From positions 282,857-346,856 of the IMG/VR virus record IMGVR_UViG_3300027759_000045: a stretch of 64,000 bases of DNA. The stretch is one strand, 5' to 3'. Both the position numbers and the translations under genes were made by a program. The stretch's first letter is position 1. Each line of letters starts with the position of its first letter. The notes beneath the pieces were generated by a model. It was not told where the DNA came from and searched no databases. It was given only the letters and a program-made list of their open reading frames with translations. This document shows, piece by piece, positions 1-56,796 of the stretch.

Positions 1-179
1 TTTGATCCATATTCTTCAAGATTCCAACATTTTTGACACGCCGAACTTTTAACTCCTGATAACAAGTCTGATTTAATTTGATCAATGTTGTAATTTCGAG
101 GTAGTAAACAGCAATGTGTTTCTTGGCCATTCCAAACTACTTCTTTTCCTACCCAGGGTAAAACACAAAATGTATCCAT
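1..179 (-). CDS. Radical SAM/Twitch-domain protein, N-terminal part (runs off window start)
   Basis: Manual translation MDTFCVLPWVGKEVVWNGQETHCCLLPRNYNIDQIKSDLLSGVKSSACQKCWNLEE matches the FCxxPW..CC..CxxCW..E N-terminus of the other radical SAM genes here; TAAATA at 184-189 on the minus strand. Confidence 0.8.
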   Translation of the reverse strand, partial: MDTFCVLPWVGKEVVWNGQETHCCLLPRNYNIDQIKSDLLSGVKSSACQKCWNLEEYGS

Positions 180-241
180 CTTTTATTTAAGTATAATGTA
201 TGTTAGAATCAAATAAATAACACAAAGGGTTCGGGACCAAA

Positions 242-490
242 ATGCAGAAGAAAACTCGTAGTTTATTAGAAGAATTAGACAGCATGTATGTGGAGCGCGA
301 CTCCCGCTATGTTATCGAAAATCGTGCTGGTAACATCATAGCCAGTGCTATACGCCTGCTAGAGCAGATTGACTCCAGTTATGAGCCCGAGGTGGCTAAA
401 AATTTGCAACGAAAGTTGATCAATGCTATCAACCTACGCGACCCTGGCAAATTTACAAGAACCGTGAGAAAAACTGATGCAAATTCATGA
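242..490 (+). CDS. Hypothetical phage protein (82 aa)
   Basis: ORF track; TAAATA at 214-219; overlaps the next gene. Confidence 0.7.
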   Translation: MQKKTRSLLEELDSMYVERDSRYVIENRAGNIIASAIRLLEQIDSSYEPEVAKNLQRKLINAINLRDPGKFTRTVRKTDANS

Positions 491-1964
491 GTTAAATCGT
501 CCACGTCGCACTGACGAAGGTGTTTGGGATGTGGTAAAAGGTGTTGGCAAAGCTGCCGCTACTGGACTCGCCCAAGCTGTATCTCCTGGAGCAGGAACAA
601 CGCAAGACTTCAGGGCATCAAGTGCAGGTATCCTTGATCCTGTAAAAAAATTAGCCGCTGTAAAGGCAAATTCAGCAATGGTCAAACTGGCAACAGAGTA
701 TGCTGATGCATGGTTAACAGATAAAAGATCACAAGTGTCGGCAGCTCCTGCACCTGCTCCTGCTCCTGCACCTGCGGCAGCTCCTGCTCCTGCACCTGCG
801 GCTGGTAAATTAACTCCAGCACAACAAAATGCATTGAAAGACAAATTGAAAGGGCAACGAGGCGCTGGCAAAACAACTGCCACCCAGACCGGCTCGGGAT
901 TCAAAGACTATGTTAGCGGAAGTCAAAACAAGTTAATTACCAATCCAGATGGTAGTACTTCAATGAAGAAACTACAGCGTGAATCAAACTATTATAATTT
1001 TGATTACATCTTAGAAAGCATTATTAACATCAACGAAAAAGCCGCAGTGGCCAATCAGCCTGTTACCAAACCAGCACCTGCCACTGGCAACGCTCAAGGA
1101 TTCAATTACAACAACGTGATGAAGATGCCGGGCATGGAAAAATATGCCACACCTGCAGGTCAGCCAAAGCCAGGACAGCCACCTGCAGGTCAGCCAAAGC
1201 CAGGGCAACCACCTGCAGGGCAACCCGATACTGACGCACAACCACCTGCAGGGCAACCAACGCCAGGGCAACCACCTGCTGGACAAGCACAACCACCTGC
1301 TGATGCAGGTGCCGGAGCAATGGGTGCTATGGCAGGACAACTAGCCAAAGGTGGAGCAGCAGGACCAAACACAATGGCTAATGCTCCAGTAAGCAAAACA
1401 AATAAAGCCAAGCCTGGAAATCCAAATGCCGGACAAGCACAACCACCTGACAATCCTGAATATATTAAAAACTTCTTAGAGTTTGCCAATGAAAAAGTTG
1501 CCATGCGCGATTCAGCCACGTACAAAATGCTTGGATTAACAGACGCTGAAGGATCTGAATTAGGGCCAGAGTTAGATGATGCCAAGCAAGCAGTTATTGA
1601 TGCCCAGGGCAATCCTGCCAACACTAAAACAGCAGTTAAAAATTATATTTTAACTGCTATGGCCGCACTACAACTGGTGACATCACAAAATTCTGTGAAG
1701 GCCGCATCACCCGAAGCACCTGCATATGGACAGCAACCACCACCGGCAGCCGGCACCACTGGAGCAGCCGCTGGCACTGCACCGGCTACAGGTCAATTGA
1801 CAGGAGCCAGTGCAGTGAAATTGTTAAACGATGCCGGGTTGACTGCTCAAATTTTAACCACAGCCGGGAAAAAAATTCAGGCCGCCACCGGCAACAAAAA
1901 ACTATCTACCTCAGGTGATTCGGTGATTGACACCATGCTACAAGGTATGGGATACACTGTATGA
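477..1964 (+). CDS. Pro/Ala/Gln-rich low-complexity protein, candidate internal head protein
   Basis: 495 aa; N-terminus MQIHEL; AP and PAGQP repeats. Confidence 0.7.
   Translation: MQIHELNRPRRTDEGVWDVVKGVGKAAATGLAQAVSPGAGTTQDFRASSAGILDPVKKLAAVKANSAMVKLATEYADAWLTDKRSQVSAAPAPAPAPAPAAAPAPAPAAGKLTPAQQNALKDKLKGQRGAGKTTATQTGSGFKDYVSGSQNKLITNPDGSTSMKKLQRESNYYNFDYILESIININEKAAVANQPVTKPAPATGNAQGFNYNNVMKMPGMEKYATPAGQPKPGQPPAGQPKPGQPPAGQPDTDAQPPAGQPTPGQPPAGQAQPPADAGAGAMGAMAGQLAKGGAAGPNTMANAPVSKTNKAKPGNPNAGQAQPPDNPEYIKNFLEFANEKVAMRDSATYKMLGLTDAEGSELGPELDDAKQAVIDAQGNPANTKTAVKNYILTAMAALQLVTSQNSVKAASPEAPAYGQQPPPAAGTTGAAAGTAPATGQLTGASAVKLLNDAGLTAQILTTAGKKIQAATGNKKLSTSGDSVIDTMLQGMGYTV
741..803 (+). repeat. 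Ala-Pro coding microrepeat
   Basis: gcwcct units encoding AAPAPAPAPAPAAAPAPAPAA. Confidence 0.85.
1152..1301 (+). repeat. Degenerate 30-bp tandem repeat (PAGQPKPGQP)
   Basis: Repeated cctgcaggtcagccaaagccagg / cctgcagggcaacc units. Confidence 0.85.
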
Positions 1965-3829
1965 TATTAAAAGAAGGCGGCAATGTTTTTAAAGACGCAA
2001 ATGGCCGTATACTAACACAGCGCATTAACCAAGCAGACGTTGCTCCCACACTCGCCTGGCTTGACCAAATGTTACCGGGCCTGGATCTACAAGACAATAC
2101 ATTAGGCTCCACAGGTAGAAAACCCACGTCGGGCGATTTGGATCTGGCAGTGGATGCCAATCAAGTCAGCAAAGAACAGTTGGTTACACGGCTGACACAA
2201 TGGTGTCAAAGCCATGGTTTCAAACCAGAAGACTACATTAAAAAGTCCGGCATTTCTGTACACTTTAAAACGCCCATCACTGGTAACCCCAATTCAGGTT
2301 ATGTGCAAACAGACTTTATGTTCTTGACTAATTTACCTTTTTCTAAATTTGTACTAAGTGCGCCTGCAGACAGTGCGTATCGTGGGCAAGACCGTAATGT
2401 GTTGATGAACAGCATTGCCAAAAGCATGGGTTACAAACTAAATCAAACTGCAGGCATTGCTGACCGTGCCACCAACAAGGTTATCACGGATGACCCGGAT
2501 AAGATTGCTCGACTGTTGTTGAATAAACAAGCAACTCGAGCAGACTTGAACAGTGTAGAAACCATTGTGGCCGCACTGGAAAATGATCCCAAGCGTGATG
2601 CCAAGCTGGCAGATGCACGTGAACACTTTGCCAAGATTGGCGTTCCTTTCATGGAAAGTGAAGAACCCTTATATAAAGAATACAACGAAGTGAACTTCTT
2701 GGCTCGACTGCGTGATCGCATTGTGAATCAAGGCATGTCAGTGATTGTGGAAGGCGCCAAGGATGCACGTATTGAACACCTGGAAGATCTAGTGTTTGAA
2801 AAAGGCACACGTGGTATTCGTGATGCAGTTGAAATCATGCGCCACGCCGCAGAAGACACACGCGGTACTACCACAGTGAAGTGGGATGGCAAGCCTGCTA
2901 TCATATTTGGCCGCAAGCCAGATGGCACGTTTGTGCTCACAGACAAAAGTGGATTTGGCGCCAAAGGATATGACGGCTTGGCCACATCTCCGGATCATAT
3001 TGCTAGAATGATGGCCATGCGGTCGGGAGATCGTACAGAGTTAATTGGGCTTTATCAAAAGTTGTTTCCATTGTTACGTGCTGCCACCCCAGACAACATG
3101 CGTGGGTTTGTACAGGGTGATTTACTGTACACCAACACACCTCCTGAACAGGCCGGCGCTTATGTGTTCCAGCCAAATTTTGTTGAATACAAGATACCTG
3201 CCAGCAGTAAACTGGGACAACGCATTGGCCGCAGTGAAGTGGGCGTGGCTGTACACACACGATATCGTGATGTTGATGCCGCTCCTGAAGCAATCAAACA
3301 GGTCACACTGAATGAAGTTCCGGGACTGTTGCTGATTGAGCCCAGTGTCAAAGACATTCGCAACGTTGAATTAAACAGTGGCCTAGTTAAACAGCTGAGT
3401 CAAATTGTGTCCACACAAGGCACTGCCATTGACAGTTTGTTCAACCCTGCTGACCTACGTGCTGCCGGCATTACTGATTTGCCACAGTTGTGCAAACGCT
3501 ACATCAACTCTAGAATTACCAGCAACTACGACAACTTGCTGAACGGCTTTGGAGACTGGCTAAAAACCAATGTAACACCACGCAAGTTCAACAACATTGT
3601 GGAATATCTGCAAAGTCCACGCACAAACATGGCGGGCATCACTTCGGCATTCACTGCATTCCTGTTGTTGCACGACATCAAAACAGACATGCTAGGGCAG
3701 TTAGATCGCCAACAGCCCGGGCAAGAAGGCTGGGTACTGGCCACCCCTGCAGGCCGTGCCAAACTGGTAAATCGCTTTGGATTCAGTGCCGGAAATCGTG
3801 CCCTAAACAATCCAGATCAAACAGCCTAA
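1961..3829 (+). CDS. Fusion of Pol-beta-type nucleotidyltransferase and DUF6267-like RNA-ligase-type adenylation domain
   Basis: N-half GSTG..SGDLDLAVD..QTDF; C-half KWDG, QGDLLY, EGWV, KLVN ligase motifs. Confidence 0.75.
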   Translation: MILKEGGNVFKDANGRILTQRINQADVAPTLAWLDQMLPGLDLQDNTLGSTGRKPTSGDLDLAVDANQVSKEQLVTRLTQWCQSHGFKPEDYIKKSGISVHFKTPITGNPNSGYVQTDFMFLTNLPFSKFVLSAPADSAYRGQDRNVLMNSIAKSMGYKLNQTAGIADRATNKVITDDPDKIARLLLNKQATRADLNSVETIVAALENDPKRDAKLADAREHFAKIGVPFMESEEPLYKEYNEVNFLARLRDRIVNQGMSVIVEGAKDARIEHLEDLVFEKGTRGIRDAVEIMRHAAEDTRGTTTVKWDGKPAIIFGRKPDGTFVLTDKSGFGAKGYDGLATSPDHIARMMAMRSGDRTELIGLYQKLFPLLRAATPDNMRGFVQGDLLYTNTPPEQAGAYVFQPNFVEYKIPASSKLGQRIGRSEVGVAVHTRYRDVDAAPEAIKQVTLNEVPGLLLIEPSVKDIRNVELNSGLVKQLSQIVSTQGTAIDSLFNPADLRAAGITDLPQLCKRYINSRITSNYDNLLNGFGDWLKTNVTPRKFNNIVEYLQSPRTNMAGITSAFTAFLLLHDIKTDMLGQLDRQQPGQEGWVLATPAGRAKLVNRFGFSAGNRALNNPDQTA

Positions 3830-3850
3830 ACCTGATTTTTTGTCAACTTG

Positions 3851-3858
3851 TATAAATA
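3851..3858 (+). promoter_or_regulatory. T4-type late promoter TATAAATA
   Basis: Exact T4 late consensus upstream of AAGGAG SD and the ATG at 3900. Confidence 0.8.
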
Positions 3859-3899
3859 ATTGCAGGTCCAACGTGACCATATACTAAGGAGATTTAAAA

Positions 3900-4310
3900 A
3901 TGGCTTATATTACACAAGTAAACGGCAACTTCGAACCAGTTGTTAATCAAGACTCAGGCACAGTTGCCGCATCACCTGGCGCAGGCTGGAACAGTGGTGC
4001 TAACACAGTGACCAGTGGCACAACAGTTAACGTTGCAGGCCCTAAGTTAGACTTCGGTACAGTTACTTTCACTGGTAACGCTACTGTAAGTGGTACTTCA
4101 TTGGGACAAGCATTCTTGACAATTCAGACACAATGCACAATTGCTATGTACGAATTCACAACCAACAGTAGTAACACTGCTACATTGGCTCTGGCTACAT
4201 ACCCAACTGGTGCATGGAACTATGCTAACGGTCAAGATCTAGACGTGGCATTGACTGCCGCTCTAGGCTATGCTGTTACCACAGCTGCCACAGCAACATT
4301 CACAAACTGA
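3900..4310 (+). CDS. Probable abundant virion structural/decoration protein (136 aa)
   Basis: Late promoter, strong SD, own terminator; Thr/Ala/Gly/Asn-rich, beta-strand-like composition. Confidence 0.65.
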   Translation: MAYITQVNGNFEPVVNQDSGTVAASPGAGWNSGANTVTSGTTVNVAGPKLDFGTVTFTGNATVSGTSLGQAFLTIQTQCTIAMYEFTTNSSNTATLALATYPTGAWNYANGQDLDVALTAALGYAVTTAATATFTN

Positions 4311-4330
4311 TCTAAACAGTTTTTGAAACA

Positions 4331-4363
4331 AAAACCCTGGAATAAAACCCAGGGTTTTCTTTT
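4331..4363 (+). terminator. Rho-independent terminator
   Basis: AAAACCCTGG-aataaaac-CCAGGGTTTT followed by ctttt. Confidence 0.85.
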
Positions 4364-4381
4364 GACGTTAAATACTTCATC

Positions 4382-4636
4382 ATGATGGTGAGCAAAATAA
4401 CTGAAGTAACAATATTTGAAAGCCCCGATGGTGGCCGCACAGTGTATGCTCGCCAACCTGGCAGTAGCGCAAGATCCTTGCACTATCAAGACCCCAAACT
4501 AAAACAAGAACTAGAAGATCTTGAAAACAAACGTCGTTGGGCAGAAATATTTGAATCACGTCACAACAGTGTAGCACTCAACGAACTATGCAACAAAGTT
4601 GAAGTGTTATACGAACTAATTAAAAAGACGCCATGA
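4382..4636 (+). CDS. Hypothetical protein (84 aa)
   Basis: ORF track; TAAATA 7 nt before ATG. Confidence 0.75.
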   Translation: MMVSKITEVTIFESPDGGRTVYARQPGSSARSLHYQDPKLKQELEDLENKRRWAEIFESRHNSVALNELCNKVEVLYELIKKTP

Positions 4637-5082
4637 GATTTGTAGTACAAACATTCTTTGACATCACTGCCACCGGCGTCACAGGACATTATAAACCTGC
4701 CCGGGTGCCGTTCCGAGATCACGCAGGCAATGTAATAACCGACGAGTTAGACTGGGGTCGTGCTAGAAATCAACAAAGAAACTGGGAAACACTCACACAA
4801 ATACTGGGACTACGTACACAGTTGTTCCGCATACAAGAACCCATGGTGGATGCATCAAATCGTGCATGGATGTTTGAATTTGAAACAGAAACTGACAACA
4901 TCTACGGCACAGATGATGATTTAACCTTGGTACTACGTGCAGATGCCGAAGGTGTGCCCATGCTGTTAGGACTGGACAATAGACCAGAAATGTCCACTGT
5001 GCTGATTACACATGGCCCCCAACAGAACATATGGTTCGCTCCGATCGCCATAAATAATGCATTGGAGACCCAACATGGTTGA
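4633..5082 (+). CDS. Hypothetical protein (149 aa)
   Basis: ATGA overlap with the upstream gene. Confidence 0.75.
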   Translation: MRFVVQTFFDITATGVTGHYKPARVPFRDHAGNVITDELDWGRARNQQRNWETLTQILGLRTQLFRIQEPMVDASNRAWMFEFETETDNIYGTDDDLTLVLRADAEGVPMLLGLDNRPEMSTVLITHGPQQNIWFAPIAINNALETQHG

Positions 5083-5338
5083 TACCACTGCTATTGAGAA
5101 AAAAAGTCTAGAAGCACACGTAGAACTGTGTGCAGAACGTTATAGTCAATTGGAACTGCGGTTAGATAACGTAGACTCTAAAATTGCCAGCCTGGAACAG
5201 ATGGTTGCACAGATACGTGATATGGTCAGAGACATGGCTGCCAAACGCAACGACCAATTGATTTCATGGGGTCTAGGTGCAATGGGCTCAATGGCCGCGG
5301 TCATTGGATGGCTGCTTGTGACTTATGTTTTTAAATGA
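5075..5338 (+). CDS. Coiled-coil protein with C-terminal TM helix (XhlA/holin-like topology)
   Basis: TAAATA at 5051 and GGAG SD favour ATG 5075; heptad region then ISWGLGAMGSMAAVIGWLLVTYVF. Confidence 0.65.
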   Translation: MVDTTAIEKKSLEAHVELCAERYSQLELRLDNVDSKIASLEQMVAQIRDMVRDMAAKRNDQLISWGLGAMGSMAAVIGWLLVTYVFK

Positions 5339-5832
5339 AAATAGATAAAGAAATTTCTCGAGAAATCCTTAAAGAATTCCCCACACTAGAACACAACAGT
5401 ATCTGGAAAAATTCTGATGGCGACTACACAGTATTTGGAAAATACAGTATTGTCAAAGAAAGTCAAGGCTACCGAGTACACTGTGCCTTAACTGATGTTG
5501 GCGTTTTTCACACTACTAAATCAGCATTGAGTTGGTGCATTGCCGACAAATTTAAACAATACAATGTGGCCCGCGATTTAATGCAGTTAGACAACAGTTT
5601 ACATCATTTAACCGTGGATATCGGCACCAGAGCCGCCATTGGTGATCGCACCAAAAATGCTGATCAACGTGAAATCATTCTAACCAAGTTAGAAAATAAG
5701 ATTTTAAAGAAAAAAGAAATAGAAAATAGATTAGCCAAATGTGTGAATTGGGCTAAATATTATCAACAACGAGGATTCGATAATGAAACTGCAAGAATTG
5801 GCCGTACTGCCGCAATCAAAACAAGTCGCTAA
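5335..5832 (+). CDS. Hypothetical protein (165 aa)
   Basis: ATGA overlap with the upstream gene. Confidence 0.7.
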   Translation: MKIDKEISREILKEFPTLEHNSIWKNSDGDYTVFGKYSIVKESQGYRVHCALTDVGVFHTTKSALSWCIADKFKQYNVARDLMQLDNSLHHLTVDIGTRAAIGDRTKNADQREIILTKLENKILKKKEIENRLAKCVNWAKYYQQRGFDNETARIGRTAAIKTSR

Positions 5833-6673
5833 AGTATTCGAAAGTTACTTTGGTAAAAGCATTACCTTTGAATCAATTTCAAAGCGTCAAGCACATGCCA
5901 TGTTAGGCCGTGTGCGTGGCTTACTGGGCGAACATCGCCGTACACCTGCATTCCATAAGAGCGAACAAGATTCAGCATACTTGAAATTAGTAATGCTAGA
6001 GCAGGTGTTGGCTAAAAAAATCAAAGAAGAGATTCCAGCGAACACAACAATGGGAATGCCAGATCCTAACAAAACAAAACAAGCTCTCAGTAAGATCACT
6101 GATCCTAAACTCAAGTCAGCAATGACCAAGAGTGCTGCCGGTCAAACGCTGTCACCAGACGAACAAAAGATGGTACAAGGTGCCGCATTATCTGCCGCCA
6201 TGGCCGCTGAAAGTCGTCGTAAAACAGGCCGTCGATTAGCCGAGAGCGAAGTACAACAAGCACAGGTTATCTTGGCCAGTCAAGACATGGTTGATCAAGT
6301 TCAGCGCATGATTGAACAAGTTACTTCTATTCAGTTCAAAGATTTGCCAGCCTTGGTTGATCAAATCCGTAACGAAATTGGCTATGACCAAGCTACCAAA
6401 TTCAATGCAGATGCCACAGCCGCACTGGGCGGAATGGTACAGAACCTACAGCAATCTAAGATTCAATTAGAAACTGCCATGGGCACAGTGACCGGACAAG
6501 CACCTGTGGTTCCGGGCGAAGTGGCTCCTGATGTTGGTGCAGAAATGCCTCCAATGGACGCTGGTGCAGAAATGCCTGCTGAACCCGGTGATGAACTAGA
6601 TGCACTGGCTGCCGATGCAGAAGCAGACCTCGAAGAGCCTGTTAAAACTGGACTAGGTCGCGAGCGTAGATAA
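5783..6673 (+). CDS. Helical acidic protein, candidate prohead core/scaffold-like
   Basis: MKLQEL N-terminus, coiled-coil composition, acidic Pro-rich tail. Confidence 0.6.
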   Translation: MKLQELAVLPQSKQVAKVFESYFGKSITFESISKRQAHAMLGRVRGLLGEHRRTPAFHKSEQDSAYLKLVMLEQVLAKKIKEEIPANTTMGMPDPNKTKQALSKITDPKLKSAMTKSAAGQTLSPDEQKMVQGAALSAAMAAESRRKTGRRLAESEVQQAQVILASQDMVDQVQRMIEQVTSIQFKDLPALVDQIRNEIGYDQATKFNADATAALGGMVQNLQQSKIQLETAMGTVTGQAPVVPGEVAPDVGAEMPPMDAGAEMPAEPGDELDALAADAEADLEEPVKTGLGRERR

Positions 6674-7014
6674 TGCGCCTACGAGAGTTTGACGAGTCTG
6701 CCAACAGCGCCCTTAAACTAGCGGCGCTGAGTCAGTTTCTCAGCGACAGAGCTGAAGACGAAGCAGCCTCAAAACAAATTAGTCAAGCAGCCTTTGTTGA
6801 CTTGGCACAGTCAATGGGTGTTAACGTAACTGAACAGAACCTAGGTGACATGATCAGCCGTGAACCATTGAGCAACTTGCTTGAACCACTTGAGCCAAAT
6901 TCGGGTGTGGTTAGATTCAAAGGCAACACCGAAGCCACAACAGGCATGAGTGTTGATCAAGCACGTGAAGTTGTTGACAGCAATGCCAAAGCAGCCTTGA
7001 AGCGTCGCCAATAA
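6673..7014 (+). CDS. Hypothetical protein, candidate head protein (113 aa)
   Basis: MRLREFDE N-terminus; TAATG overlap. Confidence 0.65.
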   Translation: MRLREFDESANSALKLAALSQFLSDRAEDEAASKQISQAAFVDLAQSMGVNVTEQNLGDMISREPLSNLLEPLEPNSGVVRFKGNTEATTGMSVDQAREVVDSNAKAALKRRQ

Positions 7015-7051
7015 AACACTCTCGCCAGACACTGGCATTAAATATCGCTAC

Positions 7052-7945
7052 ATGACACAAAAAATCTTGATTGACAAGTTAGAATTCTACATCACCAACG
7101 TGTGTAACTTAACTTGCAACGGCTGTAATCGCTACAACAATTATAAATTCAGCGGATGGCAAAGTTGGGCAGAAGCCGAACCTGTTCTCACTCGCTGGGC
7201 AGAAAAAATAGACATACGACATCCTGTAATCCTTGGTGGCGAGCCACTGCTTAATCCTGACATTGTTAAATGGATTAACGGTATTAGGCAATTGTGGCCC
7301 AAGCATTCGGGAGTTCAAGTGCAAAGCAACGGAACACGCATCGACTGCGTTAAAGGGTTAGATGAGGCTCTTAATCCTAAAGAGGGAAACTGGTTGGGCA
7401 TTAGTATACACAATCCCAATGACCGAGAAGAAATATTTGCTCGTGTACGAAACTTCTTAGGACCTACTGTAATAGAAACACAACGCAAAGATGATCCAAT
7501 TGGTAGCAATTATCAATTTATTAATGATAAAAAATTAACAATCCACGCCTGGATGAGCAACAAGTTTGTTCAAAGCAATATTATTGAACTTCCAGACAAC
7601 AAGTACACACTGTATCAGAGTGATCCTACACGGGCACACGAAAACTGTACCTTCCGTAGATTTAAAAACTATCACATGATCAATGGGAAAATCTACAAGT
7701 GCGGTCCAGCCGCTCTAATGCCCGAATTTGATGATCAATACCATTTTGAAATAAGCGATGAGGATCGTGCTATGCTACACAGCTATCGACCGTTGACCAT
7801 TGATGAGTTTGATCTACGTGGCAAAGAGTTTATTGACACGATTGATAACCAAATTGATCAATGCAAGTTTTGCCCAGAATCATACGAATACAAACCCATC
7901 ACATTCAGTGATCGTAAAAAACCCTGGATAAAAGAACCAAAATGA
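7052..7945 (+). CDS. Radical SAM protein
   Basis: TNVCNLTCNGC (CxxxCxxC), GGEPLL, C-terminal auxiliary Cys residues. Confidence 0.9.
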   Translation: MTQKILIDKLEFYITNVCNLTCNGCNRYNNYKFSGWQSWAEAEPVLTRWAEKIDIRHPVILGGEPLLNPDIVKWINGIRQLWPKHSGVQVQSNGTRIDCVKGLDEALNPKEGNWLGISIHNPNDREEIFARVRNFLGPTVIETQRKDDPIGSNYQFINDKKLTIHAWMSNKFVQSNIIELPDNKYTLYQSDPTRAHENCTFRRFKNYHMINGKIYKCGPAALMPEFDDQYHFEISDEDRAMLHSYRPLTIDEFDLRGKEFIDTIDNQIDQCKFCPESYEYKPITFSDRKKPWIKEPK

Positions 7946-8002
7946 TAGTAAATACATGCAGAATGTAGTATAATACATTTAATGTATGCAAAGGATACAA
8001 AG

Positions 8003-8299
8003 ATGAAAAAAATTCTTTTAGTCGTATTAATGACAATCGCAACAGCCGCATTTGCACAACACGGACACTTTAACCGTCACTACCATGGCGGGCATTGGCA
8101 ACGTGGGCACAGCGGCAATTGGGTTTGGATGGTCCCTGCAATCATTGGAGGTGCAATTGTATACGAAGCATCACGACAGGCACCACCGCAACCTGTAATT
8201 ATTCAACAGCAACAGTCTGTTGACACAAATTGTAGCCCTTGGACAGAAATACAAAATCCAGACGGCACAATAACCAGAACAAGAACTTGTACAAAGTAA
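8003..8299 (+). CDS. Exported His/Gly-rich small protein
   Basis: AAGGA SD; signal peptide MKKILLVVLMTIATAAFA-Q. Confidence 0.7.
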   Translation: MKKILLVVLMTIATAAFAQHGHFNRHYHGGHWQRGHSGNWVWMVPAIIGGAIVYEASRQAPPQPVIIQQQQSVDTNCSPWTEIQNPDGTITRTRTCTK

Positions 8300-8339
8300 T
8301 TGTAAATCAGTAAATTAAAACAGAAAGTAGTAGCAGTAT

Positions 8340-8543
8340 ATGGCATTAGGTAAAGTAAAGTGGTTTAATGAAACCAAAGGTTTTGGGTTTATTACTCCAG
8401 ACGAAGGTGGCGAAGAATTGTTTGCACACTATTCAGCAATTCAAACGCAAGGCTTCAAAGTCCTCAAAGAAAATCAACGTGTGACATACGATGTGGTTCA
8501 AGGACAAAAGGGCCTGCAGGCATCTAACATTAAACCAGAGTAA
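8340..8543 (+). CDS. cspA: Cold-shock protein
   Basis: [15 protein letters not shown] (RNP1), ELFAHYSAI (RNP2). Confidence 0.95.
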
Positions 8544-8549
8544 ACACAC

Positions 8550-8942
8550 ATGTCTTACAGCAAAAAGGTGGTCGATCACTATGAAAATCCCAGGAATGTC
8601 GGATCTTTTGACAAGACTGATACTGATATTGGTACTGGTATGGTTGGCGCACCTGCTTGCGGGGATGTCATGAAATTACAAATAAAGGTTGATAATGATA
8701 CAGGTATTATTACAGATGCAAAATTTAAAACGTATGGCTGCGGATCGGCTATTGCGAGCTCGAGCCTTATTACAGAGTGGGTCAAAGGCATGCACATCGA
8801 CCAAGCAGGAGCAATCAAAAACTCCGACATCGCTGAAGAATTGGCCTTACCCCCCGTGAAGATACATTGTAGCATTCTAGCCGAAGACGCAATCAAAGCG
8901 GCTGTGGACGACTATCGTAAGAAGCATGATCTCGTTAACTGA
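8550..8942 (+). CDS. iscU: Fe-S cluster scaffold IscU
   Basis: DHYENPRNVG, GAPACGD, FKTYGCGSA, LPPVKIHC. Confidence 0.95.
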   Translation: MSYSKKVVDHYENPRNVGSFDKTDTDIGTGMVGAPACGDVMKLQIKVDNDTGIITDAKFKTYGCGSAIASSSLITEWVKGMHIDQAGAIKNSDIAEELALPPVKIHCSILAEDAIKAAVDDYRKKHDLVN

Positions 8943-9246
8943 TGCTGCCGCTCGAAAAATACAACAAACAATAACTCGGCGTGGGCACGGTGAAGGAATA
9001 AGATTAGGTGTTAGAACCACTGGGTGTTCTGGACTTGCTTATGTGTTAGAATATGTGGATACACCGCAAGCAACAGATCAATGTTTTGACTGTACTGGTT
9101 GCCGAGTGTTTGTTGATCCCAAGTCTGGTGCTTACTTACAAGGTGTAACAGTTGACTATGTTCGCCAAGGGCTCAATGAAGGTTTTGAATTTCGCAATCC
9201 AAATGAACGTGATCGGTGTGGATGTGGAGAAAGTTTCCGTATTTAA
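8926..9246 (+). CDS. iscA: A-type Fe-S carrier IscA
   Basis: TTGCSG and CGCGESF motifs. Confidence 0.95.
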   Translation: MISLTDAAARKIQQTITRRGHGEGIRLGVRTTGCSGLAYVLEYVDTPQATDQCFDCTGCRVFVDPKSGAYLQGVTVDYVRQGLNEGFEFRNPNERDRCGCGESFRI

Positions 9247-9265
9247 AAGCCTCTAGACTAATAGT

Positions 9266-10084
9266 ATGAATTATTATTTTGAACCTGCTCCTTATCTTTC
9301 GTTAAATTTAAATCTAAAAACAGAATTGTCTAATTTAGATAGAAGCAAGTTAACAATTGCAGATGCAGCATTATATGACATGGATCCTGTGAGATTAAGT
9401 AACATAGTAGAAAACATTTATTCTGATGAAAAACAATGTTTTTTTGATTTTTACGGTGATAACTTTACTAATCTAGCATCATGCACCACCTGGTATCTGC
9501 CAGAGAAATTGGAAAAATTGTTACTCAGTGAGTATGAGTATTTTTTTAATTTAATCAACGAAGCTCCTGAAATACGATTACAAGCAATGACTGGTGTTCA
9601 ATTGCCTGTGCATGTTGATCGTCATAGAACTGTAAGTATCATACTTCCATTGAAGAATCATTCAAATACATGGACAAAATTTTATGATCACGACATTGAT
9701 ATTCTCCACTGGAACAACCACTATTCAAACAGCAAGGATCAGTCTTGGCCCGAATGCAAAACACTCTGGGATTTTAACTTTCTTCCCGAGTTCGTAAAAC
9801 AAGAATTGCTTGAAAATGCACACACTCATACACTGTTAACTGAAGGTATTCGTCGTCAACGAATACCACCCTTAGTTAATCCAACCCAGACAACTGAAGT
9901 TTGCGAAGTTGAAATTGATAAATTTCCTTATATACTCAATGTTGATAAATGCCACAGTGTTTACTGTCCTGACGCACCCACTGATGAGAATCCCCGCTTG
10001 GCAGTATTTTTCAAGTGGCGAGAAATTAAATTTACTCAAGTATTAGATGCTTATAATCAATTTGTCAAATTTAAAATTAATTAA
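9266..10084 (+). CDS. Putative 2OG-Fe(II) oxygenase/cupin
   Basis: PVHVD (HxD), distal KCHSV, PRLAV. Confidence 0.6.
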   Translation: MNYYFEPAPYLSLNLNLKTELSNLDRSKLTIADAALYDMDPVRLSNIVENIYSDEKQCFFDFYGDNFTNLASCTTWYLPEKLEKLLLSEYEYFFNLINEAPEIRLQAMTGVQLPVHVDRHRTVSIILPLKNHSNTWTKFYDHDIDILHWNNHYSNSKDQSWPECKTLWDFNFLPEFVKQELLENAHTHTLLTEGIRRQRIPPLVNPTQTTEVCEVEIDKFPYILNVDKCHSVYCPDAPTDENPRLAVFFKWREIKFTQVLDAYNQFVKFKIN

Positions 10085-10090
10085 AATTCA

Positions 10091-11374
10091 ATGATTACCC
10101 AAACAATTGAATGGATTAAAAATAATCCTACATTTTGCACAGCACCATATTCTGCCTACGATTTTAGATTCAACGTTGGCAAATTTAAAGTTACTACGTG
10201 CTGTAATTTAGACGTGTCCAAGACCAACCAAGCACTGGATTTTAATTTTATAGAAAACGTCAAACAAGACATGTCACAAGGACTAGTGCCCAAGGCTTGT
10301 TGGCGTTGTGCGTCCGAAGAACAAAACCAAGCACAGTCTGAACGTGTAAAGTACATGCTAGGACACACCGTTGCTGAATTAGAACAGTTTAAGGAAAATA
10401 AAAAAACAAACGAATTTCAAGTTGGTATGAAGTTTAGCAATCTTTGCAACTTAGCTTGTCGTAGTTGTAACGAAACTGACAGTAGTTTATGGGCCAAATT
10501 AATGAATACGCCTGCGCCTCCTGAATATGAAATTGACACGTCAACAGACCAGTTTCTTTGGGATCAAATGACCAATATGATTCGTTCTAAACATAAAGAA
10601 ACTGATAATTTCATTGTACATCCAATTGGCGGAGAAACAATGATTCAACCAGGATTTTTAAAATTAGTTGATTGGTTGATTGAAGAAAATTTAGCCAACA
10701 CCACTACACTACGAATTACCACCAGTCTTGTGCCCAGTATATCTGAAAAGTTTTCTGCAAAATTTGCACAGTTTCGCCGCATAGAATTTCTTTCCAGCAT
10801 CGACAGCATTGGAGAAAATTATCATTACGTCCGTTGGCCTGCCAGGTTCAACAAAATAGAAGATAACCTGGAAACATTCAATCTGTTGAGTCGGCAATAT
10901 CCTGGCAAATTTTCCTTGTCGGTCAGCCCGGTATTTTCATTAAATAACATTTTTTATGCAGTGGACTATCTTGATTGGTGGAAACGCTGGGCCGACCAAA
11001 CACAAACTGATTTATGGATGTCAAACATACACTTGTATAATCCTGAGCCATTGATGGTGGAAAGTTTATCATTACAATACTACCCGCAACTGATTGAACT
11101 GTTAGAGCAATGTGTAAACCACACAGTATTTAAAAAATACACACGCACTGCTGTGCTGAAAGAATTCTTTGTTGCCATGCTTGCAACAATTTCTAATAAC
11201 AAAAACAACAACAACGAGTTGCGTTTTCAAGAGTACCTGAAGTTCACTGCAGATTATGATAATCGCACAACCACCGATAGCTACACCTTAAATTCTAAAC
11301 TGTTTGATTTACTGTCAGACTCCCATAAACATATATACAACTCTCATTTGCAACATGTACAATCCAAAATTTAA
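10091..11374 (+). CDS. Radical SAM protein with N-terminal Twitch-like domain
   Basis: FCTAPY..CC..CWRC then SNLCNLACRSC, GGET. Confidence 0.9.
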   Translation: MITQTIEWIKNNPTFCTAPYSAYDFRFNVGKFKVTTCCNLDVSKTNQALDFNFIENVKQDMSQGLVPKACWRCASEEQNQAQSERVKYMLGHTVAELEQFKENKKTNEFQVGMKFSNLCNLACRSCNETDSSLWAKLMNTPAPPEYEIDTSTDQFLWDQMTNMIRSKHKETDNFIVHPIGGETMIQPGFLKLVDWLIEENLANTTTLRITTSLVPSISEKFSAKFAQFRRIEFLSSIDSIGENYHYVRWPARFNKIEDNLETFNLLSRQYPGKFSLSVSPVFSLNNIFYAVDYLDWWKRWADQTQTDLWMSNIHLYNPEPLMVESLSLQYYPQLIELLEQCVNHTVFKKYTRTAVLKEFFVAMLATISNNKNNNNELRFQEYLKFTADYDNRTTTDSYTLNSKLFDLLSDSHKHIYNSHLQHVQSKI

Positions 11375-42610: not shown

Positions 42611-43122
42611 TATACAATCCACGGAAATACCAATTATATAAATTCTGGGATGAAGAGTTTAAAAACTTGGATTACATTCAAGAGCCTTTTAACGATCCTG
42701 CAAGTTTAGAACTATGGCAAAGTCAAGGATATCAAAGTAAAATTTGTGGCGAACTATGTGACATGCGACACAGACTTCCGGACTGGGCACCAAAGTTTAT
42801 AGATATGTACCGGGCACAAGGCTGGCAAGACATTGGCCTAGCGTTTTATCGCATGCCCACCGGCACAGTTATGCCGGTGCATAGAGATCTGTACAAGCGT
42901 TATATCGAACTGTTTAATTTGCAAGGTCGAGAACGATCAATACGTCGAGCATTGGTGTTGTTAGAAGATTGGAAACCCGGACACTACCTTGAAGTAGATG
43001 GTGTTCCTTATGTCAATTGGAAAGCAGGACAAACATCAGAATGGGTGTATGATGCACCGCACATGGCAGCCAACATTGGACTTGAAGATCGGTACACATT
43101 GCAAATTACAGGGCACCTATGA
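42607..43122 (+). CDS. 2OG-Fe(II) oxygenase
   Basis: MPVHRD, APHMAAN, RYTLQITG. Confidence 0.75.
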   Translation: MIYNPRKYQLYKFWDEEFKNLDYIQEPFNDPASLELWQSQGYQSKICGELCDMRHRLPDWAPKFIDMYRAQGWQDIGLAFYRMPTGTVMPVHRDLYKRYIELFNLQGRERSIRRALVLLEDWKPGHYLEVDGVPYVNWKAGQTSEWVYDAPHMAANIGLEDRYTLQITGHL

Positions 43123-44036
43123 TAGACAGCCGTAACGAATGGGATCCACTGGAAGCCATAGTAGTTGGCAGTGCAACCAACGCCAATTGGCCCAGCAATG
43201 ATCCGGTATTTGCTATAGAATCGTCTAAAACATCCTGGACCGAAACACCTGTGCCAACTGGTCCTGTACCCAACTGGATTGTTGAAGAAGCCAACGCGGA
43301 ACTTGATCGCCTGTCAGAGATATTAGCTGACTACGGCGCAGTAGTGTACAGACCCAAACCGATGGACTTTGTTGAGTTAGGTGGAATGTACAACTATTGT
43401 CCACGTGATAGATTGTTAGTAGCAGGCGACACTGTGGTTGATGTAAACATGATGTATCCTTGCCGGAATCAAGAAACCGAAGGCCTACAACAAATTATTC
43501 AACAAGCTAACACAGTGTTAACAATGCCCCGGGATCAAGGCATGATTTTAGATGCTGCCAATGTATGCAGACTAGGTGGCACCTGGTTATACCTACAAAG
43601 TCACAGTGGTAATTTGGCCGCATATGATTGGCTGTGCAATCAATTCCCTGCGATTGACATTGAGCTGTGTAACTTTTATTCCGGAGTACACATTGACAGT
43701 ACCATTGTGCCTGTGCGGGAAGGATTGGTATTGTTGAATGCCAGTCGTGTAACTGAATCAAATTGTCCGGCAGCGTTTGATTCCTGGGAAAAAATCTACA
43801 TCGACGATGTAGTGCCACAGGGCTTTTATCAATATCCGTATGCATCCAAATGGATTGCCATGAATATGTTGGTGCTGGATCCCCGAACAGTTATTGTAGA
43901 TGCCGCACAAACAGCACTAATTACTGTATTAAAGTCAAAAGGCATTGATGCTATACCTCATACGCTAAGCCACAGCCGTACATTAGGTGGTGGGTTTCAT
44001 TGCGTGACACTTGACACACGGAGAAAACATGATTGA
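43119..44036 (+). CDS. Amidinotransferase (glycine/inosamine-phosphate amidinotransferase family)
   Basis: NEWDPLEAIVVG, YCPRD, HIDST, GGGFHCVT. Confidence 0.9.
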   Translation: MIDSRNEWDPLEAIVVGSATNANWPSNDPVFAIESSKTSWTETPVPTGPVPNWIVEEANAELDRLSEILADYGAVVYRPKPMDFVELGGMYNYCPRDRLLVAGDTVVDVNMMYPCRNQETEGLQQIIQQANTVLTMPRDQGMILDAANVCRLGGTWLYLQSHSGNLAAYDWLCNQFPAIDIELCNFYSGVHIDSTIVPVREGLVLLNASRVTESNCPAAFDSWEKIYIDDVVPQGFYQYPYASKWIAMNMLVLDPRTVIVDAAQTALITVLKSKGIDAIPHTLSHSRTLGGGFHCVTLDTRRKHD

Positions 44037-56137: not shown

Positions 56138-56735
56138 GTCCCAACAAGATACTGTAGCGTGTTTTGTCAGTGCGATTCCATCCGTCGTGCCAGGTGTTCC
56201 AGTCGTTGCTGTGTATCCATCCGGCGCCGTAACCAGTGGCAACACGACGCGGATTGTGTCGATCCGGATGATCATAAAAACAACTGGCTGAGTCCGGATC
56301 GTCACCCTCGGCCAGGTATATCATACCGGTGCCCACCAATCGTCGCATGTCGCAGTGAATACCGTTTTCAAAGCCCGGCAAGTCTTTGGTAAATTCTGCA
56401 TGCAGTTCAGTATTTGTACTCATGCGCCAAGGATACATCTGCCAGTTGACTTGCAGTATAGCCTTGTCTCGATACAGACATTCAATAACGTAATCTTTTA
56501 CAGAATCCTGCCTGAAGAATTGAGAAATTTGTTGCAACTTAGGGCTACGAGGACGATGTACTTTAAACCGTTTGCCGGTCCATTCGTCATGTTTAACAGC
56601 AGTTTCGGCTCCGTATGGTTTCCAGTCTTCCTGCTCAAAGTCAGCTATTAATTCTTCTCGGCTCCATGGAAAGGTTGTCTGAACTCGAGAGTACGCATAG
56701 TCTTCTGGAAAAATTTCAAATTTAATGTCTTGCAT
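56076..56735 (-). CDS. 2OG-Fe(II) oxygenase-like protein
   Basis: GIHCD, GMIYL, TWHDG, RYSILL; start at MQDIKF. Confidence 0.7.
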   Translation of the reverse strand: MQDIKFEIFPEDYAYSRVQTTFPWSREELIADFEQEDWKPYGAETAVKHDEWTGKRFKVHRPRSPKLQQISQFFRQDSVKDYVIECLYRDKAILQVNWQMYPWRMSTNTELHAEFTKDLPGFENGIHCDMRRLVGTGMIYLAEGDDPDSASCFYDHPDRHNPRRVATGYGAGWIHSNDWNTWHDGWNRTDKTRYSILLGLTLKLENQPQATDQAVQTTA

Positions 56736-56796
56736 ATGATCACTTTGTGTGTTATACTTACTTATATTACACACCCATGCATAACAAGGAAATTCC

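What the first reader, a model, noticed from the sequence alone, without database searches (positions are those of the whole stretch)
1..11374. Six radical-SAM enzymes with phage-encoded IscU/IscA placed between two of them
Seen: radical SAM genes at <1-179, 7052, 10091, 35284, 54863 and 57420. Five start with a Cys-rich Twitch-like segment ahead of CxxxCxxC; for the truncated one only that segment is in the window. iscU/iscA lie between the 7052 and 10091 genes. 2OG oxygenases (9266, 56735) directly abut radical SAM genes. Established: SPASM/Twitch domains are normally C-terminal and bind auxiliary Fe-S clusters. Inference: the phage runs a multi-enzyme modification programme (DNA bases, virion proteins/glycans or peptides) whose cluster demand selects for its own Fe-S scaffold and carrier.
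Basis: partly seen in the sequence, partly recalled or inferred. Interest (0 to 1): 0.6.

Follow-up and report, generated by a model that had tools for sequence, protein, structure and literature searches.

The report
Phage radical-SAM expansion with Fe-S helpers
A 347-kb freshwater jumbo phage carries 21 radical-SAM enzymes, 16 of an uncharacterised family with its extra iron-sulfur domain at the front, plus its own IscU and IscA; this enzyme-plus-helper combination has been reported in marine phages, but a conserved five-enzyme cassette found here points to an undescribed sugar-tailoring pathway.

Summary
The window has five complete radical-SAM genes and the N-terminal piece of a sixth. Five belong to NCBIfam NF033640 (N-terminal Twitch). 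The gene at 7052 carries the same four-Cys signature at its C-terminus. A canonical iscU-iscA pair lies between 7052 and 10091.

The window is the last 64 kb of a complete 346,856-bp lake phage related to Rak2/Atu_ph07-type jumbo myoviruses. That genome has 21 radical-SAM genes, 16 above the NF033640 cut-off. Thirty-five large related viral contigs each carry 2-12 copies. A cassette of five tandem copies plus a carbamoyltransferase and an amidinotransferase is syntenic across them.

All eight near-complete relatives carry IscU or an A-type carrier. However, copy number does not track IscU, adjacency is rare (4 of 48 loci), and a 156-kb cyanophage-family (Kyanoviridae) phage has IscU with one radical-SAM gene. 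The phage lacks IscS and ferredoxin.

Neighbours in phages and in cellular genomes are sugar-pathway enzymes. No peptide precursor was found.

Best reading: two-cluster tailoring enzymes of an amino-sugar or glycan pathway, helped by phage-boosted Fe-S assembly. The Fe-S supply idea and multi-enzyme phages were published in 2010 and 2017. The cassette and the family's chemistry are not described in the papers I could search.

The parts
3..179 (-). N-terminal 59 residues (the four Twitch Cys) of a 357-aa N_Twi radical-SAM gene that continues upstream of the window (genome 281962-283035)
   Evidence: NF033640 partial match; the full gene scores 207 bits; Cys at 5, 23/24, 48, 51
7052..7945 (+). 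297-aa radical-SAM enzyme with CxxxCxxC at 18-25 and a C-terminal Twitch-like C-x17-C-x53-CxxC
   Evidence: PF04055 46 bits; Cys positions; two genome paralogues share the C-terminal pattern
8550..8942 (+). IscU Fe-S scaffold with three Cys, Asp, His and the LPPVK chaperone motif
   Evidence: TIGR01999 220.8 bits, cut-off 192.4; sequence read
8926..9246 (+). IscA-type A-type Fe-S carrier, overlapping the end of iscU
   Evidence: TIGR00049 114 bits (cut-off 58.8); TIGR02011 145.7 bits (cut-off 150.6); adjacent to iscU in 61 of 69 related loci
9266..10084 (+). Divergent Fe(II)/2OG-oxygenase-like protein between iscA and the N_Twi gene
   Evidence: No Pfam hit; invariant HxD...H; AF2 pLDDT 91; Foldseek top hits are JmjC/2OG oxygenases
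10091..11374 (+). N_Twi radical-SAM enzyme (427 aa)
   Evidence: NF033640 183 bits
35284..36438 (+). N_Twi radical-SAM enzyme (384 aa)
   Evidence: NF033640 232.5 bits
41366..42610 (+). UDP-glucose dehydrogenase-like enzyme; candidate partner supplying sugar precursors
   Evidence: phrog_9148 E 4e-86
43119..44036 (+). StrB1-type amidinotransferase, paralogue of the one in the conserved cassette
   Evidence: PDB 1BWD inosamine-phosphate amidinotransferase E 5e-61; paralogy
54863..56137 (+). N_Twi radical-SAM enzyme (424 aa); this is the copy that was modelled
   Evidence: NF033640 290.8 bits; AF2 pLDDT 93; radical-SAM core matches at Z about 10
56076..56858 (-).
   Evidence: No Pfam hit; HxD...H...RxS by eye; some Atlas neighbours carry 2OG-FeII_Oxy_3
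56797..57420 (+). ClpP protease subunit, overlapping the start of the next N_Twi gene by one base
   Evidence: PF00574 214 bits; NF001368 251 bits
57420..58718 (+). N_Twi radical-SAM enzyme (432 aa)
   Evidence: NF033640 232.3 bits

Best explanation
The window is the end of a complete 347-kb freshwater jumbo myovirus that encodes 21 radical-SAM enzymes. Sixteen belong to the uncharacterised family NF033640.

Shown: each of the 16 has a four-Cys Twitch-like module (C-x17-C-x~45-CxxC, with a predicted beta-hairpin between the first two Cys) placed ahead of the CxxxCxxC radical-SAM core. So each should hold two [4Fe-4S] clusters.

Inferred: because all four auxiliary ligands are Cys, as in BtrN and unlike MoaA, the second cluster is most likely an electron relay. 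The reactions would then be oxidative tailoring steps such as dehydrogenation, epimerisation or cross-linking.

Inferred from gene context: the enzymes work as a multi-step tailoring set on amino-sugar, nucleotide-sugar or glycan substrates. Their partners would be a NodU/TobZ-type carbamoyltransferase, StrB1/AGAT-type amidinotransferases, a DegT aminotransferase, a UDP-glucose dehydrogenase, glycosyl- and methyltransferases, and cupin/2OG oxygenases.

Inferred: the phage IscU scaffold and its two A-type carriers raise the infected cell's capacity to build and deliver [4Fe-4S] clusters. They would draw on host IscS, ferredoxin and HscBA, which the phage lacks. One set of the 21 enzymes would need at least 42 clusters.

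The local order (7052 radical SAM, csp, iscU, iscA, oxygenase, N_Twi) is an operon of one sub-lineage. It is not a general rule.
For: Family membership and conserved Cys. SPASM Pfam match on the N-terminal segment. The model has strands 14-17 and 22-24 between C8 and C26, and a radical-SAM core at Z about 10 to anSME, BlsE, DesII, viperin, CteB and MoaA. BtrN has four Cys and does a 2-electron oxidation; MoaA has three Cys and an open Fe site: PMC9012708.

Lineage-wide expansion: 35 of 35 large relatives carry 2-12 copies. Syntenic cassette of five tandem copies plus carbamoyltransferase and amidinotransferase, with overlapping genes.

Cellular arrays occur in Parcubacteria, Microthrixaceae and Iamiaceae. 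Their neighbours include GT2, GT1/GT4, carbamoyltransferase, AsnB-type amidotransferase and YdjC. Phage sugar genes.

IscU and IscA have all ligand residues and LPPVK. There is a second A-type carrier at genome 19.5 kb, and 8 of 8 near-complete relatives carry at least one assembly gene. IscU and the carrier are very rare in GenBank phages. No IscS or ferredoxin. Radical-SAM genes recur inside isc operons of some relatives (in L076 the 7052-like gene sits between iscU and iscA).
Against: No member of NF033640 has a known reaction, and nothing was found in the searchable literature. The fold search cannot separate sugar-, nucleotide- and peptide-acting radical-SAM enzymes, which all tie at Z about 10. 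Most cassette partners have no detectable family. No cyclitol-forming enzyme was found. Several 'cellular' loci are probably mis-binned phage contigs, which weakens the first neighbour tally.

IscU is not tied to copy number and is usually not adjacent. IscU also occurs with a single radical-SAM gene in phage C48C1. No expression data exist: no RNA run holds the locus.
Confidence: 0.45

Rival explanations
1. iscU/iscA are general auxiliary metabolic genes. They keep the host's own Fe-S proteins (respiration, nucleotide synthesis, repair) working during infection under iron limitation or oxidative stress. Their co-occurrence with radical-SAM genes reflects shared ancestry in one lineage, not demand.
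For: More than 600 viral contigs encode close IscU relatives, and only 8 of 80 sampled have an N_Twi gene within 10 kb. Phage C48C1 has IscU and one radical-SAM gene. Within the lineage, copy number does not track IscU. Marine phages with these genes are scattered among relatives that lack them (PMC5332604).
Against: All 8 near-complete N_Twi-rich relatives carry at least one assembly gene, while both genes are nearly absent from 50,697 GenBank phage records. Radical-SAM genes are inserted in or next to the isc operon in several relatives. Most sampled IscU contigs are short, so lack of a nearby gene says little about the whole genome.
Confidence: 0.25
2. The N_Twi enzymes are peptide or protein maturases (RiPP-type, or modifiers of virion or host proteins), like most SPASM/Twitch enzymes.
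For: The best Foldseek matches are CteB, SkfB and anSME. There are weak NCBIfam matches to many peptide maturases. A weak Nif11-like hit (E 0.005) lies in the 113-aa ORF just upstream of the 7052 gene. ClpP abuts one copy.
Against: There is no RRE or PqqD-like domain, because the N-terminus is the Twitch module. No conserved small ORF lies in or beside the cassette in eight relatives, and the genes overlap tightly. The Nif11 hit is below Pfam's cut-off and that ORF has no Cys. The neighbours are sugar enzymes.
Confidence: 0.15
3. The enzymes build a hypermodified DNA base or a DNA-linked sugar that protects the phage genome from host nucleases.
For: Campylobacter phages CP220 and CPt10 carry 11-12 radical-SAM genes, including a five-gene module with an amidinotransferase (PMC2853527). 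From general knowledge, radical-SAM enzymes take part in known phage base hypermodifications. UDP-sugar enzymes are present.
Against: The same tandem arrays occur in cellular genomes next to glycosyltransferases and other glycan-type genes. The CP220 enzymes are not N_Twi members. I did not search for a base-exchange enzyme (TGT/DpdA) or a hydroxymethylase, so this rival is under-tested rather than excluded.
Confidence: 0.1
4. The products are diffusible small molecules (antibiotic-like or signalling amino-sugar derivatives), or nucleotide analogues used against competitors or host defences.
For: The enzyme classes match aminoglycoside or nucleoside-antibiotic tailoring: StrB1-like amidinotransferase at E 5e-61, TobZ/NodU-type carbamoyltransferase, BtrN-like Twitch logic, and KanJ among the oxygenase fold hits. 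Viperin ties in the fold search. A cyanophage paper already called such genes 'antibiotic synthesis genes' (PMC12801897).
Against: No scaffold-forming enzyme was found: no DOI synthase and no inositol dehydrogenase family. No exporter was identified. The resemblance is at the level of enzyme class only.
Confidence: 0.05

Closest known systems
NCBIfam NF033640, N_Twi_rSAM (twitch domain-containing radical SAM protein)
   Same: Sixteen genome copies (four complete in the window) score above the curated cut-off over the full model length. They share the N-terminal four-Cys module followed by CxxxCxxC.
   Different: The family is a curated sequence model with no reaction assigned, and no paper in the library describes an N-terminal Twitch or SPASM. 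The paralogues here are only 16-29% identical to each other.
BtrN and other Twitch/SPASM radical-SAM enzymes (MoaA, anSME, CteB, SkfB)
   Same: Two-cluster architecture. The auxiliary cluster has four Cys ligands with C-x17-C...CxxC spacing and a hairpin between the first two. The radical-SAM cores superpose at Z about 10 (PMC9012708).
   Different: The auxiliary module is N-terminal here, whereas SPASM and Twitch are defined as C-terminal extensions (PMC9012708). There is no significant sequence match to any PDB chain. Substrates are unknown.
Marine environmental viral genomes with IscU/A-type carrier plus many radical-SAM genes (Nishimura et al. 2017, PMC5332604)
   Same: T4-related phages that combine Fe-S scaffold or carrier genes with up to 12 radical-SAM genes, ClpP, Cas4-like nuclease and others. 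That paper suggested the phage genes coordinate Fe-S supply and recycling.
   Different: This is a freshwater 347-kb jumbo phage related to Rak2/Atu_ph07 types. It has 21 radical-SAM genes, a defined enzyme family and a conserved cassette. The paper did not analyse the enzymes' family, auxiliary clusters or neighbours.
Campylobacter phages CP220/CPt10 (Timms et al. 2010, PMC2853527)
   Same: They have 11-12 radical-SAM genes per genome, including an exchangeable module of five radical-SAM genes plus a putative amidinotransferase. That is the same gene-class combination as the cassette here.
   Different: The CP220 enzymes match only the radical-SAM core of NF033640 (31 bits or less, model positions 92 onward), so they lack the N-terminal Twitch. 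No IscU was reported. The host and phage lineage differ.
Bacterial ISC system (IscS-IscU-IscA-HscBA-Fdx)
   Same: IscU and IscA are canonical, with ligand Cys, Asp and His and the LPPVK motif. Gene order is iscU then iscA.
   Different: Only the scaffold and carriers are phage-encoded. No IscS or ferredoxin was found. HscBA was not searched.

Membership tests
Radical SAM superfamily (PF04055) | CxxxCxxC motif for the SAM-binding [4Fe-4S] cluster | tested here: met
   Present in all 21 genes, and invariant in the 16 N_Twi copies
Radical SAM superfamily (PF04055) | Profile match above the gathering score, and a partial TIM-barrel core | tested here: met
   PF04055 at 31-48 bits (cut-off 29.5) for four window genes. 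The 10091 gene has no Pfam hit but scores 183 bits on NF033640. The model's core aligns to anSME, MoaA and viperin at Z about 10. The GGE motif is invariant.
NF033640 N_Twi_rSAM | Full-length score above the curated cut-off of 170 bits | tested here: met
   183, 232.5, 290.8 and 232.3 bits for the four complete window genes. Sixteen genome copies score 183-403 bits.
NF033640 N_Twi_rSAM | Cys-rich Twitch-like module N-terminal to the radical-SAM motif | tested here: met
   C8, C26, C73 and C76 (numbering of the 54863 protein) are conserved in the 16 copies; in one copy the first Cys is unaligned but present by eye. PF13186 SPASM matches residues 8-77 at 20.4 bits, just under its 21.5 cut-off, and matches a seventeenth divergent copy at 28.6 bits.
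Twitch domain (as in BtrN, MoaA) | One auxiliary [4Fe-4S] cluster, with Cys ligands flanking a beta-hairpin | tested here: inconclusive
   The predicted strands 14-17 and 22-24 lie between C8 and C26.
Twitch domain (as in BtrN, MoaA) | C-terminal extension of the radical-SAM core | tested here: not met
   The module is N-terminal in the 16 copies. It is C-terminal in the 7052 gene and two paralogues.
IscU (TIGR01999) | Score above the cut-off, three ligand Cys, conserved Asp and His, and LPPVK | tested here: met
   220.8 bits against a cut-off of 192.4; residues read in the sequence
IscA (TIGR02011 equivalog) / A-type carrier (TIGR00049) | Score above the cut-off, and Cys...CGCG ligands | tested here: inconclusive
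   TIGR02011 scores 145.7 against 150.6, just below. TIGR00049 scores 114.2 against 58.8, so that is met. The ligand Cys are present. It is safely an A-type carrier; the IscA-versus-SufA/ErpA subtype is not settled.
Complete ISC machinery | Cysteine desulfurase IscS and ferredoxin | tested here: not met
   PF00266 scores only 17 bits, on a DegT-type aminotransferase. PF00111 has no match.
Fe(II)/2OG oxygenase (gene 9266-10084) | HxD/E...H iron triad on a double-stranded beta-helix | tested here: inconclusive
   The triad is invariant in 17 homologues. Foldseek's best hits are JmjC/2OG enzymes, but with low TM-scores (0.2-0.33) and E 1e-4 to 1e-3. There is no Pfam match.
RiPP radical-SAM maturase | Precursor peptide gene nearby, and a leader-recognition (RRE) domain | tested here: not met
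   No conserved small ORF in the cassette of eight relatives. No RRE match. The only hit is a sub-threshold Nif11 match at 6673-7014.
Aminoglycoside-type pathway | Cyclitol-forming enzyme (DOI synthase or inositol dehydrogenase family) alongside the tailoring enzymes | tested here: not met
   PF01761 and PF01408 are absent from the genome. The tailoring classes are present.

The most novel reading that the evidence does not exclude
The syntenic cassette is a virus-borne biosynthetic gene cluster for a heavily tailored amino-sugar or glycan, or a small molecule derived from one. It comprises five tandem N_Twi radical-SAM enzymes, a carbamoyltransferase, an amidinotransferase and several families of unknown proteins, and is shared by a widespread uncultured lineage of lake jumbo phages and by some CPR and actinobacterial genomes. 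Each N_Twi paralogue would carry out a distinct radical step, so NF033640 would be a new functional class of carbohydrate-acting two-cluster radical-SAM enzymes with a permuted Twitch domain.
Probability: 0.3. Interest if true: 0.8.

Novelty: new variant of a known kind. Interest (0 to 1): 0.6.

Why it matters
Phages that combine many radical-SAM enzymes with Fe-S assembly genes have been known since 2010 and 2017, but nobody has said what the enzymes do. This case narrows the question. The enzymes are one curated but uncharacterised family with a front-mounted auxiliary cluster. A five-gene core is conserved with carbamoyl- and amidinotransferases across an abundant group of freshwater jumbo phages. 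The same arrays sit in glycan-type gene clusters of cellular genomes.

That gives enzymologists a defined set of orthologous targets. It gives phage biologists a testable idea: a costly, iron-hungry sugar-tailoring pathway that makes it worthwhile for the virus to carry its own Fe-S scaffold. If confirmed, it would add a new reaction class to radical-SAM chemistry and a new kind of viral metabolic investment relevant to iron budgets in lakes.

Tried and rejected
- Near-identity DNA search of the region against GenBank phages found no match. No tRNAs are in the window.
- Sequence search of an N_Twi protein against PDB chains gave only chance hits.
- Fold searches returned generic radical-SAM cores tied at Z about 10, so they allow no substrate call.
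- Pfam, NCBIfam and PDB-profile searches of the cassette's unknown proteins gave nothing. These are the 355-aa family, the roughly 370-aa six-member family, and the 262- and 232-aa genes. From memory, a 'TEK'-type motif in the 370-aa family recalls some glycosyltransferases, but Pfam did not support it, so I make no claim.
- An alignment of the 16 paralogues was too divergent to seed a collection scan; an alignment of closer homologues worked.
- An HMM of the N-terminal module did not significantly match the C-terminal Cys region of the three short radical-SAM proteins. A circular-permutation relationship therefore rests on the shared Cys spacing only.
- The six-member 'paralogue family' of the 9266 protein shares only a roughly 40-residue motif, not the oxygenase core. 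It was rejected as evidence for 2OG-oxygenase identity.
- Promoter and terminator scans of 6.5-12.2 kb were at chance level.
- The first neighbour tally from MAG loci is partly contaminated by probable phage contigs. I repeated it on loci from large cellular contigs.
- The large representative protein search, the complex prediction and alternative genetic codes were not used. Nothing called for them, and all reading was in table 11.

Full report
**What the window is.** The 64-kb window is the last 64 kb (282,857-346,856) of a 346,856-bp virus record with a 134-bp terminal repeat. The record is estimated 100% complete and has 43.6% G+C. Its family-B DNA polymerase is closest (42-51% identity) to the jumbo myoviruses Sinorhizobium phage Phosso, Agrobacterium phage Atu_ph07, Vibrio phage 2.275.O and the 121Q/Rak2-like group. 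The genome also has a T4-type large terminase. Near-identical sequence occurs in freshwater and lake metagenomes from 16 studies, and no RNA run holds it. There is no near-DNA match among 50,697 GenBank phage records. It is therefore an uncultured freshwater jumbo phage.

**Check of the observation.**
- The genes at 10091, 35284, 54863 and 57420 score 183-291 bits on NCBIfam NF033640, 'twitch domain-containing radical SAM protein' (cut-off 170).
- The ORF at 3-179(-) is the first 59 residues of a 357-aa member whose whole gene scores 207 bits.
- The 7052 gene is a radical-SAM protein without the N-terminal segment.
- iscU (TIGR01999, 221 bits, above cut-off) and an A-type carrier lie between the 7052 and 10091 genes. 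The carrier scores 114 bits on TIGR00049, above cut-off, and 146 bits on the IscA equivalog, just under 150.6.
- IscU keeps its three Cys, the Asp and His, and the LPPVK chaperone motif. The carrier keeps its Cys...CGCG ligands.

The two '2OG oxygenases' are less firm. The 9266 protein has no Pfam hit. It does have an invariant HxD...H triad in 17 homologues, and a confident model (pLDDT 91) whose best PDB matches are almost all JmjC/2OG oxygenases at modest scores. The '56735' gene is a minus-strand ORF with an HxD...H...RxS pattern and some Atlas neighbours that carry 2OG-oxygenase domains, but no profile hit. The + strand gene that actually touches the 57420 gene is ClpP.

**Anatomy of the enzymes.** In an alignment of all 16 genome copies, the Cys at positions 8, 26, 73 and 76 (numbering of the 54863 protein) are conserved, and position 27 is often Cys too. 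They are followed by the invariant C116xxxC120xxC123, a GGE motif and a few other residues. In one copy the first Cys is unaligned but present by eye. The spacing is C-x17-C-x~45-CxxC.

The AlphaFold model (pLDDT 93) puts two short strands (14-17 and 22-24) between the first two Cys. That is the hairpin-between-ligands layout of SPASM/Twitch modules. Pfam's SPASM model matches residues 8-77 just under its cut-off. It matches a seventeenth, more divergent copy above it.

SPASM and Twitch are defined as C-terminal extensions (PMC9012708). Here the module sits in front of the core. The 7052 protein and two paralogues carry C-x17-C-x53-56-CxxC at the C-terminus, and a fifth outlier has a similar C-terminal set. 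So all 21 radical-SAM proteins of the genome have a predicted auxiliary site. One molecule of each would need at least 42 [4Fe-4S] clusters.

Four Cys ligands resemble BtrN, which has a closed cluster and does a two-electron oxidation. They do not resemble MoaA, which has three Cys and an open Fe that binds substrate (PMC9012708). On that basis I infer an electron-relay role and oxidative tailoring chemistry. This is inference, not a result.

**Scale.** The genome holds 16 copies above the NF033640 cut-off and five further radical-SAM genes. The paralogues are only 16-29% identical to each other, whereas orthologues in related phages are 45-73% identical. The paralogy is therefore old.

Thirty-five large related IMG/VR contigs (50-608 kb) all carry 2-12 copies. 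A core cassette is syntenic in at least nine of them, with tightly overlapping genes. It holds:
- five tandem N_Twi genes;
- a NodU/CmcH/TobZ-type carbamoyltransferase (Pfam E 1e-48);
- an AGAT/StrB1-type amidinotransferase (PDB E 3.5e-14);
- a 355-aa unknown protein;
- members of a roughly 370-aa unknown family.

Among GenBank phages the family is almost absent. It was found only in Vibrio phages K566 and K567, Ralstonia phage RsoM2USA and a marine single-cell virus.

**Test of the Fe-S link.** I sampled 80 IscU-bearing viral loci out of more than 600.
- IscA is present in 69 of the 80 and directly follows iscU in 61.
- An N_Twi gene lies anywhere in the flank of up to 10 kb in only 8.
- One lies within 3 kb downstream in 4 of the 48 loci that have enough flank.
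- A 7052-like gene lies in 4 loci. In one relative it sits between iscU and iscA.

At genome level, the eight records that are at least 89% complete give these counts (N_Twi / IscU / A-type carrier):

| Record | N_Twi | IscU | A-type carrier |
|---|---|---|---|
| G000 (this genome) | 16 | 1 | 2 |
| G002 | 6 | 1 | 2 |
| G006 (608 kb) | 9 | 0 | 1 |
| G007 | 11 | 1 | 2 |
| G008 | 7 | 1 | 2 |
| G009 | 11 | 1 | 2 |
| G010 | 6 | 0 | 1 |
| G011 | 8 | 1 | 0 |

Every one has at least one assembly gene, but copy number does not predict IscU. G002 was found through its IscU, so it is not an independent sample. Both genes are very rare in GenBank phages, and most hits there look like host contigs. One true case, phage C48C1 of the cyanophage family Kyanoviridae (host not given in the record), has IscU with a single radical-SAM gene.

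The phage has no IscS and no ferredoxin. Any benefit must therefore come from extra scaffold and carrier working with host sulfur and electron donors. These data fit a lineage-level association. They neither prove nor exclude a demand-driven one, because the relatives are not independent.

**What the enzymes act on.** Fold comparison is uninformative. anSME, viperin, BlsE, DesII, CteB, MoaA and SkfB all tie near Z 10. Context is the only guide.

In the phage, the relevant genes are:
- a DegT-type sugar aminotransferase just upstream of the cassette (203 bits);
- the carbamoyl- and amidinotransferases;
- a second, StrB1-like amidinotransferase in the window at 43119-44036 (E 5e-61 to PDB 1BWD), next to a UDP-glucose dehydrogenase-like gene;
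- a GT2 glycosyltransferase, a mannose-6-phosphate-isomerase-type cupin, a cytidylyltransferase and three class-I methyltransferases;
- three Asp/Arg-hydroxylase-type oxygenases, one directly after a radical-SAM gene.

The first look at 'bacterial' loci was partly misleading. Two Haliscomenobacter MAG contigs carry the phage cassette at 64-84% identity with phage-like G+C, and are probably mis-binned phage. Arrays also exist on large cellular contigs:
- seven tandem copies, plus four more radical-SAM genes upstream, in a Parcubacteria genome on a 1.27-Mb contig;
- nine, five and four copies in two Microthrixaceae genomes and one Iamiaceae genome.

Their neighbours include GT2 (three), GT1/GT4 (two), carbamoyltransferases (two), AsnB-type amidotransferases (two), YdjC and an LPG-synthase-type membrane protein.

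No conserved small ORF or leader-recognition domain was found, which argues against a RiPP role. No cyclitol-forming enzyme is present, which argues against a true aminoglycoside pathway. I therefore favour tailoring of amino-sugars, nucleotide-sugars or glycans, with moderate confidence. Whether the product decorates virions, DNA, the host envelope or is released is open.

**Comparison with what is known.**
- Nishimura et al. (2017) described marine T4-like viral genomes with IscU or A-type carriers, up to 12 radical-SAM genes, ClpP, Cas4, Grx and PaaD. They suggested that the phage genes coordinate supply and recycling of Fe-S clusters (PMC5332604).
- Timms et al. (2010) reported 11-12 radical-SAM genes in Campylobacter phages CP220 and CPt10, including an exchangeable module of five plus an amidinotransferase (PMC2853527). 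Those enzymes are not N_Twi members.
- A 2025 cyanophage paper noted an amidinotransferase beside a radical-SAM 'maturase' (PMC12801897).
- NF033640 is a curated family, but I found no paper on an N-terminal Twitch or SPASM.

What is new here:
- the scale (21 genes, the most in any single genome among those I examined or found reported);
- the assignment to one family with conserved auxiliary ligands;
- the conserved cassette and its partners;
- its presence in cellular glycan-type clusters;
- the finding that adjacency to iscU/iscA is a sub-lineage trait.

**Verdict.** The best explanation has confidence 0.45: two-cluster tailoring enzymes of a sugar or glycan pathway, with phage-boosted Fe-S assembly. 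The main rival is that iscU/iscA are general host-support genes. Interest is 0.6, as a new variant of a known kind.

Noticed in passing
window 52801-53376, 56797-57420, 31052-32251; genome 48732-51020; ClpS and Hsp20 somewhere in genome 246-346 kb (tally only): The phage carries a near-complete Clp system: two ClpP paralogues, a ClpX-like ATPase, a 762-aa ClpA/B-like ATPase, a ClpS adaptor and an Hsp20. The two ClpP genes flank the 54863 radical-SAM gene, and one overlaps the start of the 57420 gene by one base.
   Followed up: partly
window 43119-44036 and genome 136557-137576: There are two amidinotransferase paralogues. The window copy matches streptomycin StrB1 (PDB 1BWD) at E 5e-61 and sits beside a UDP-glucose dehydrogenase-like gene.
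   Followed up: partly
window 6673-7014: A 113-aa ORF directly upstream of the 7052 radical-SAM gene has a sub-threshold Nif11 (RiPP leader-type) hit at E 0.005. It has no Cys, so this is probably chance.
   Followed up: partly
window 9266-10084 and genome 38623, 40042, 108058, 250014, 275409: Six otherwise dissimilar proteins share a motif of about 40 residues (roughly KDPSWPxC...DF..LPE.I.QE). Two of the six lie directly next to N_Twi genes, and one carries a clear Asp/Arg-hydroxylase domain. The role of the motif is unknown.
   Followed up: partly
L189 and L192 (Haliscomenobacter sp. MAG contigs of 148 and 183 kb): These contigs carry the phage cassette at 64-84% protein identity with 44% G+C. 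They look like jumbo-phage contigs binned into a bacterial MAG, or a large prophage.
   Followed up: partly
genome 148545-149548 (outside the window): There is a 1-kb gap between the fourth and fifth cassette genes. Three relatives have a 364-388-aa gene in that place, so this phage has probably lost a gene there.
   Followed up: no
L221/L214/L222 (Parcubacteria genome, contig of 1.27 Mb, about 822-846 kb): At least eleven radical-SAM genes lie on one strand within about 24 kb of a genome of about 1.7 Mb. That is a very large share of such a small genome.
   Followed up: partly
window 11304-12074: A PD-(D/E)XK (Cas4-like) nuclease ORF overlaps the 3' end of the 10091 gene by 71 bases as called from its TTG start. 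The true start is probably further downstream.
   Followed up: no
window 34277-34894 (-): A NUMOD3-motif protein (homing-endonuclease type) lies just upstream of the 35284 radical-SAM gene.
   Followed up: no
window 8340-8543: A 67-aa cold-shock-type (CspA-like by eye) gene directly precedes iscU. The csp-iscU pair recurs in 5 related loci.
   Followed up: partly
genome 19519-19827: A second A-type Fe-S carrier gene lies far from the iscU-iscA pair. Most near-complete relatives also carry two.
   Followed up: partly
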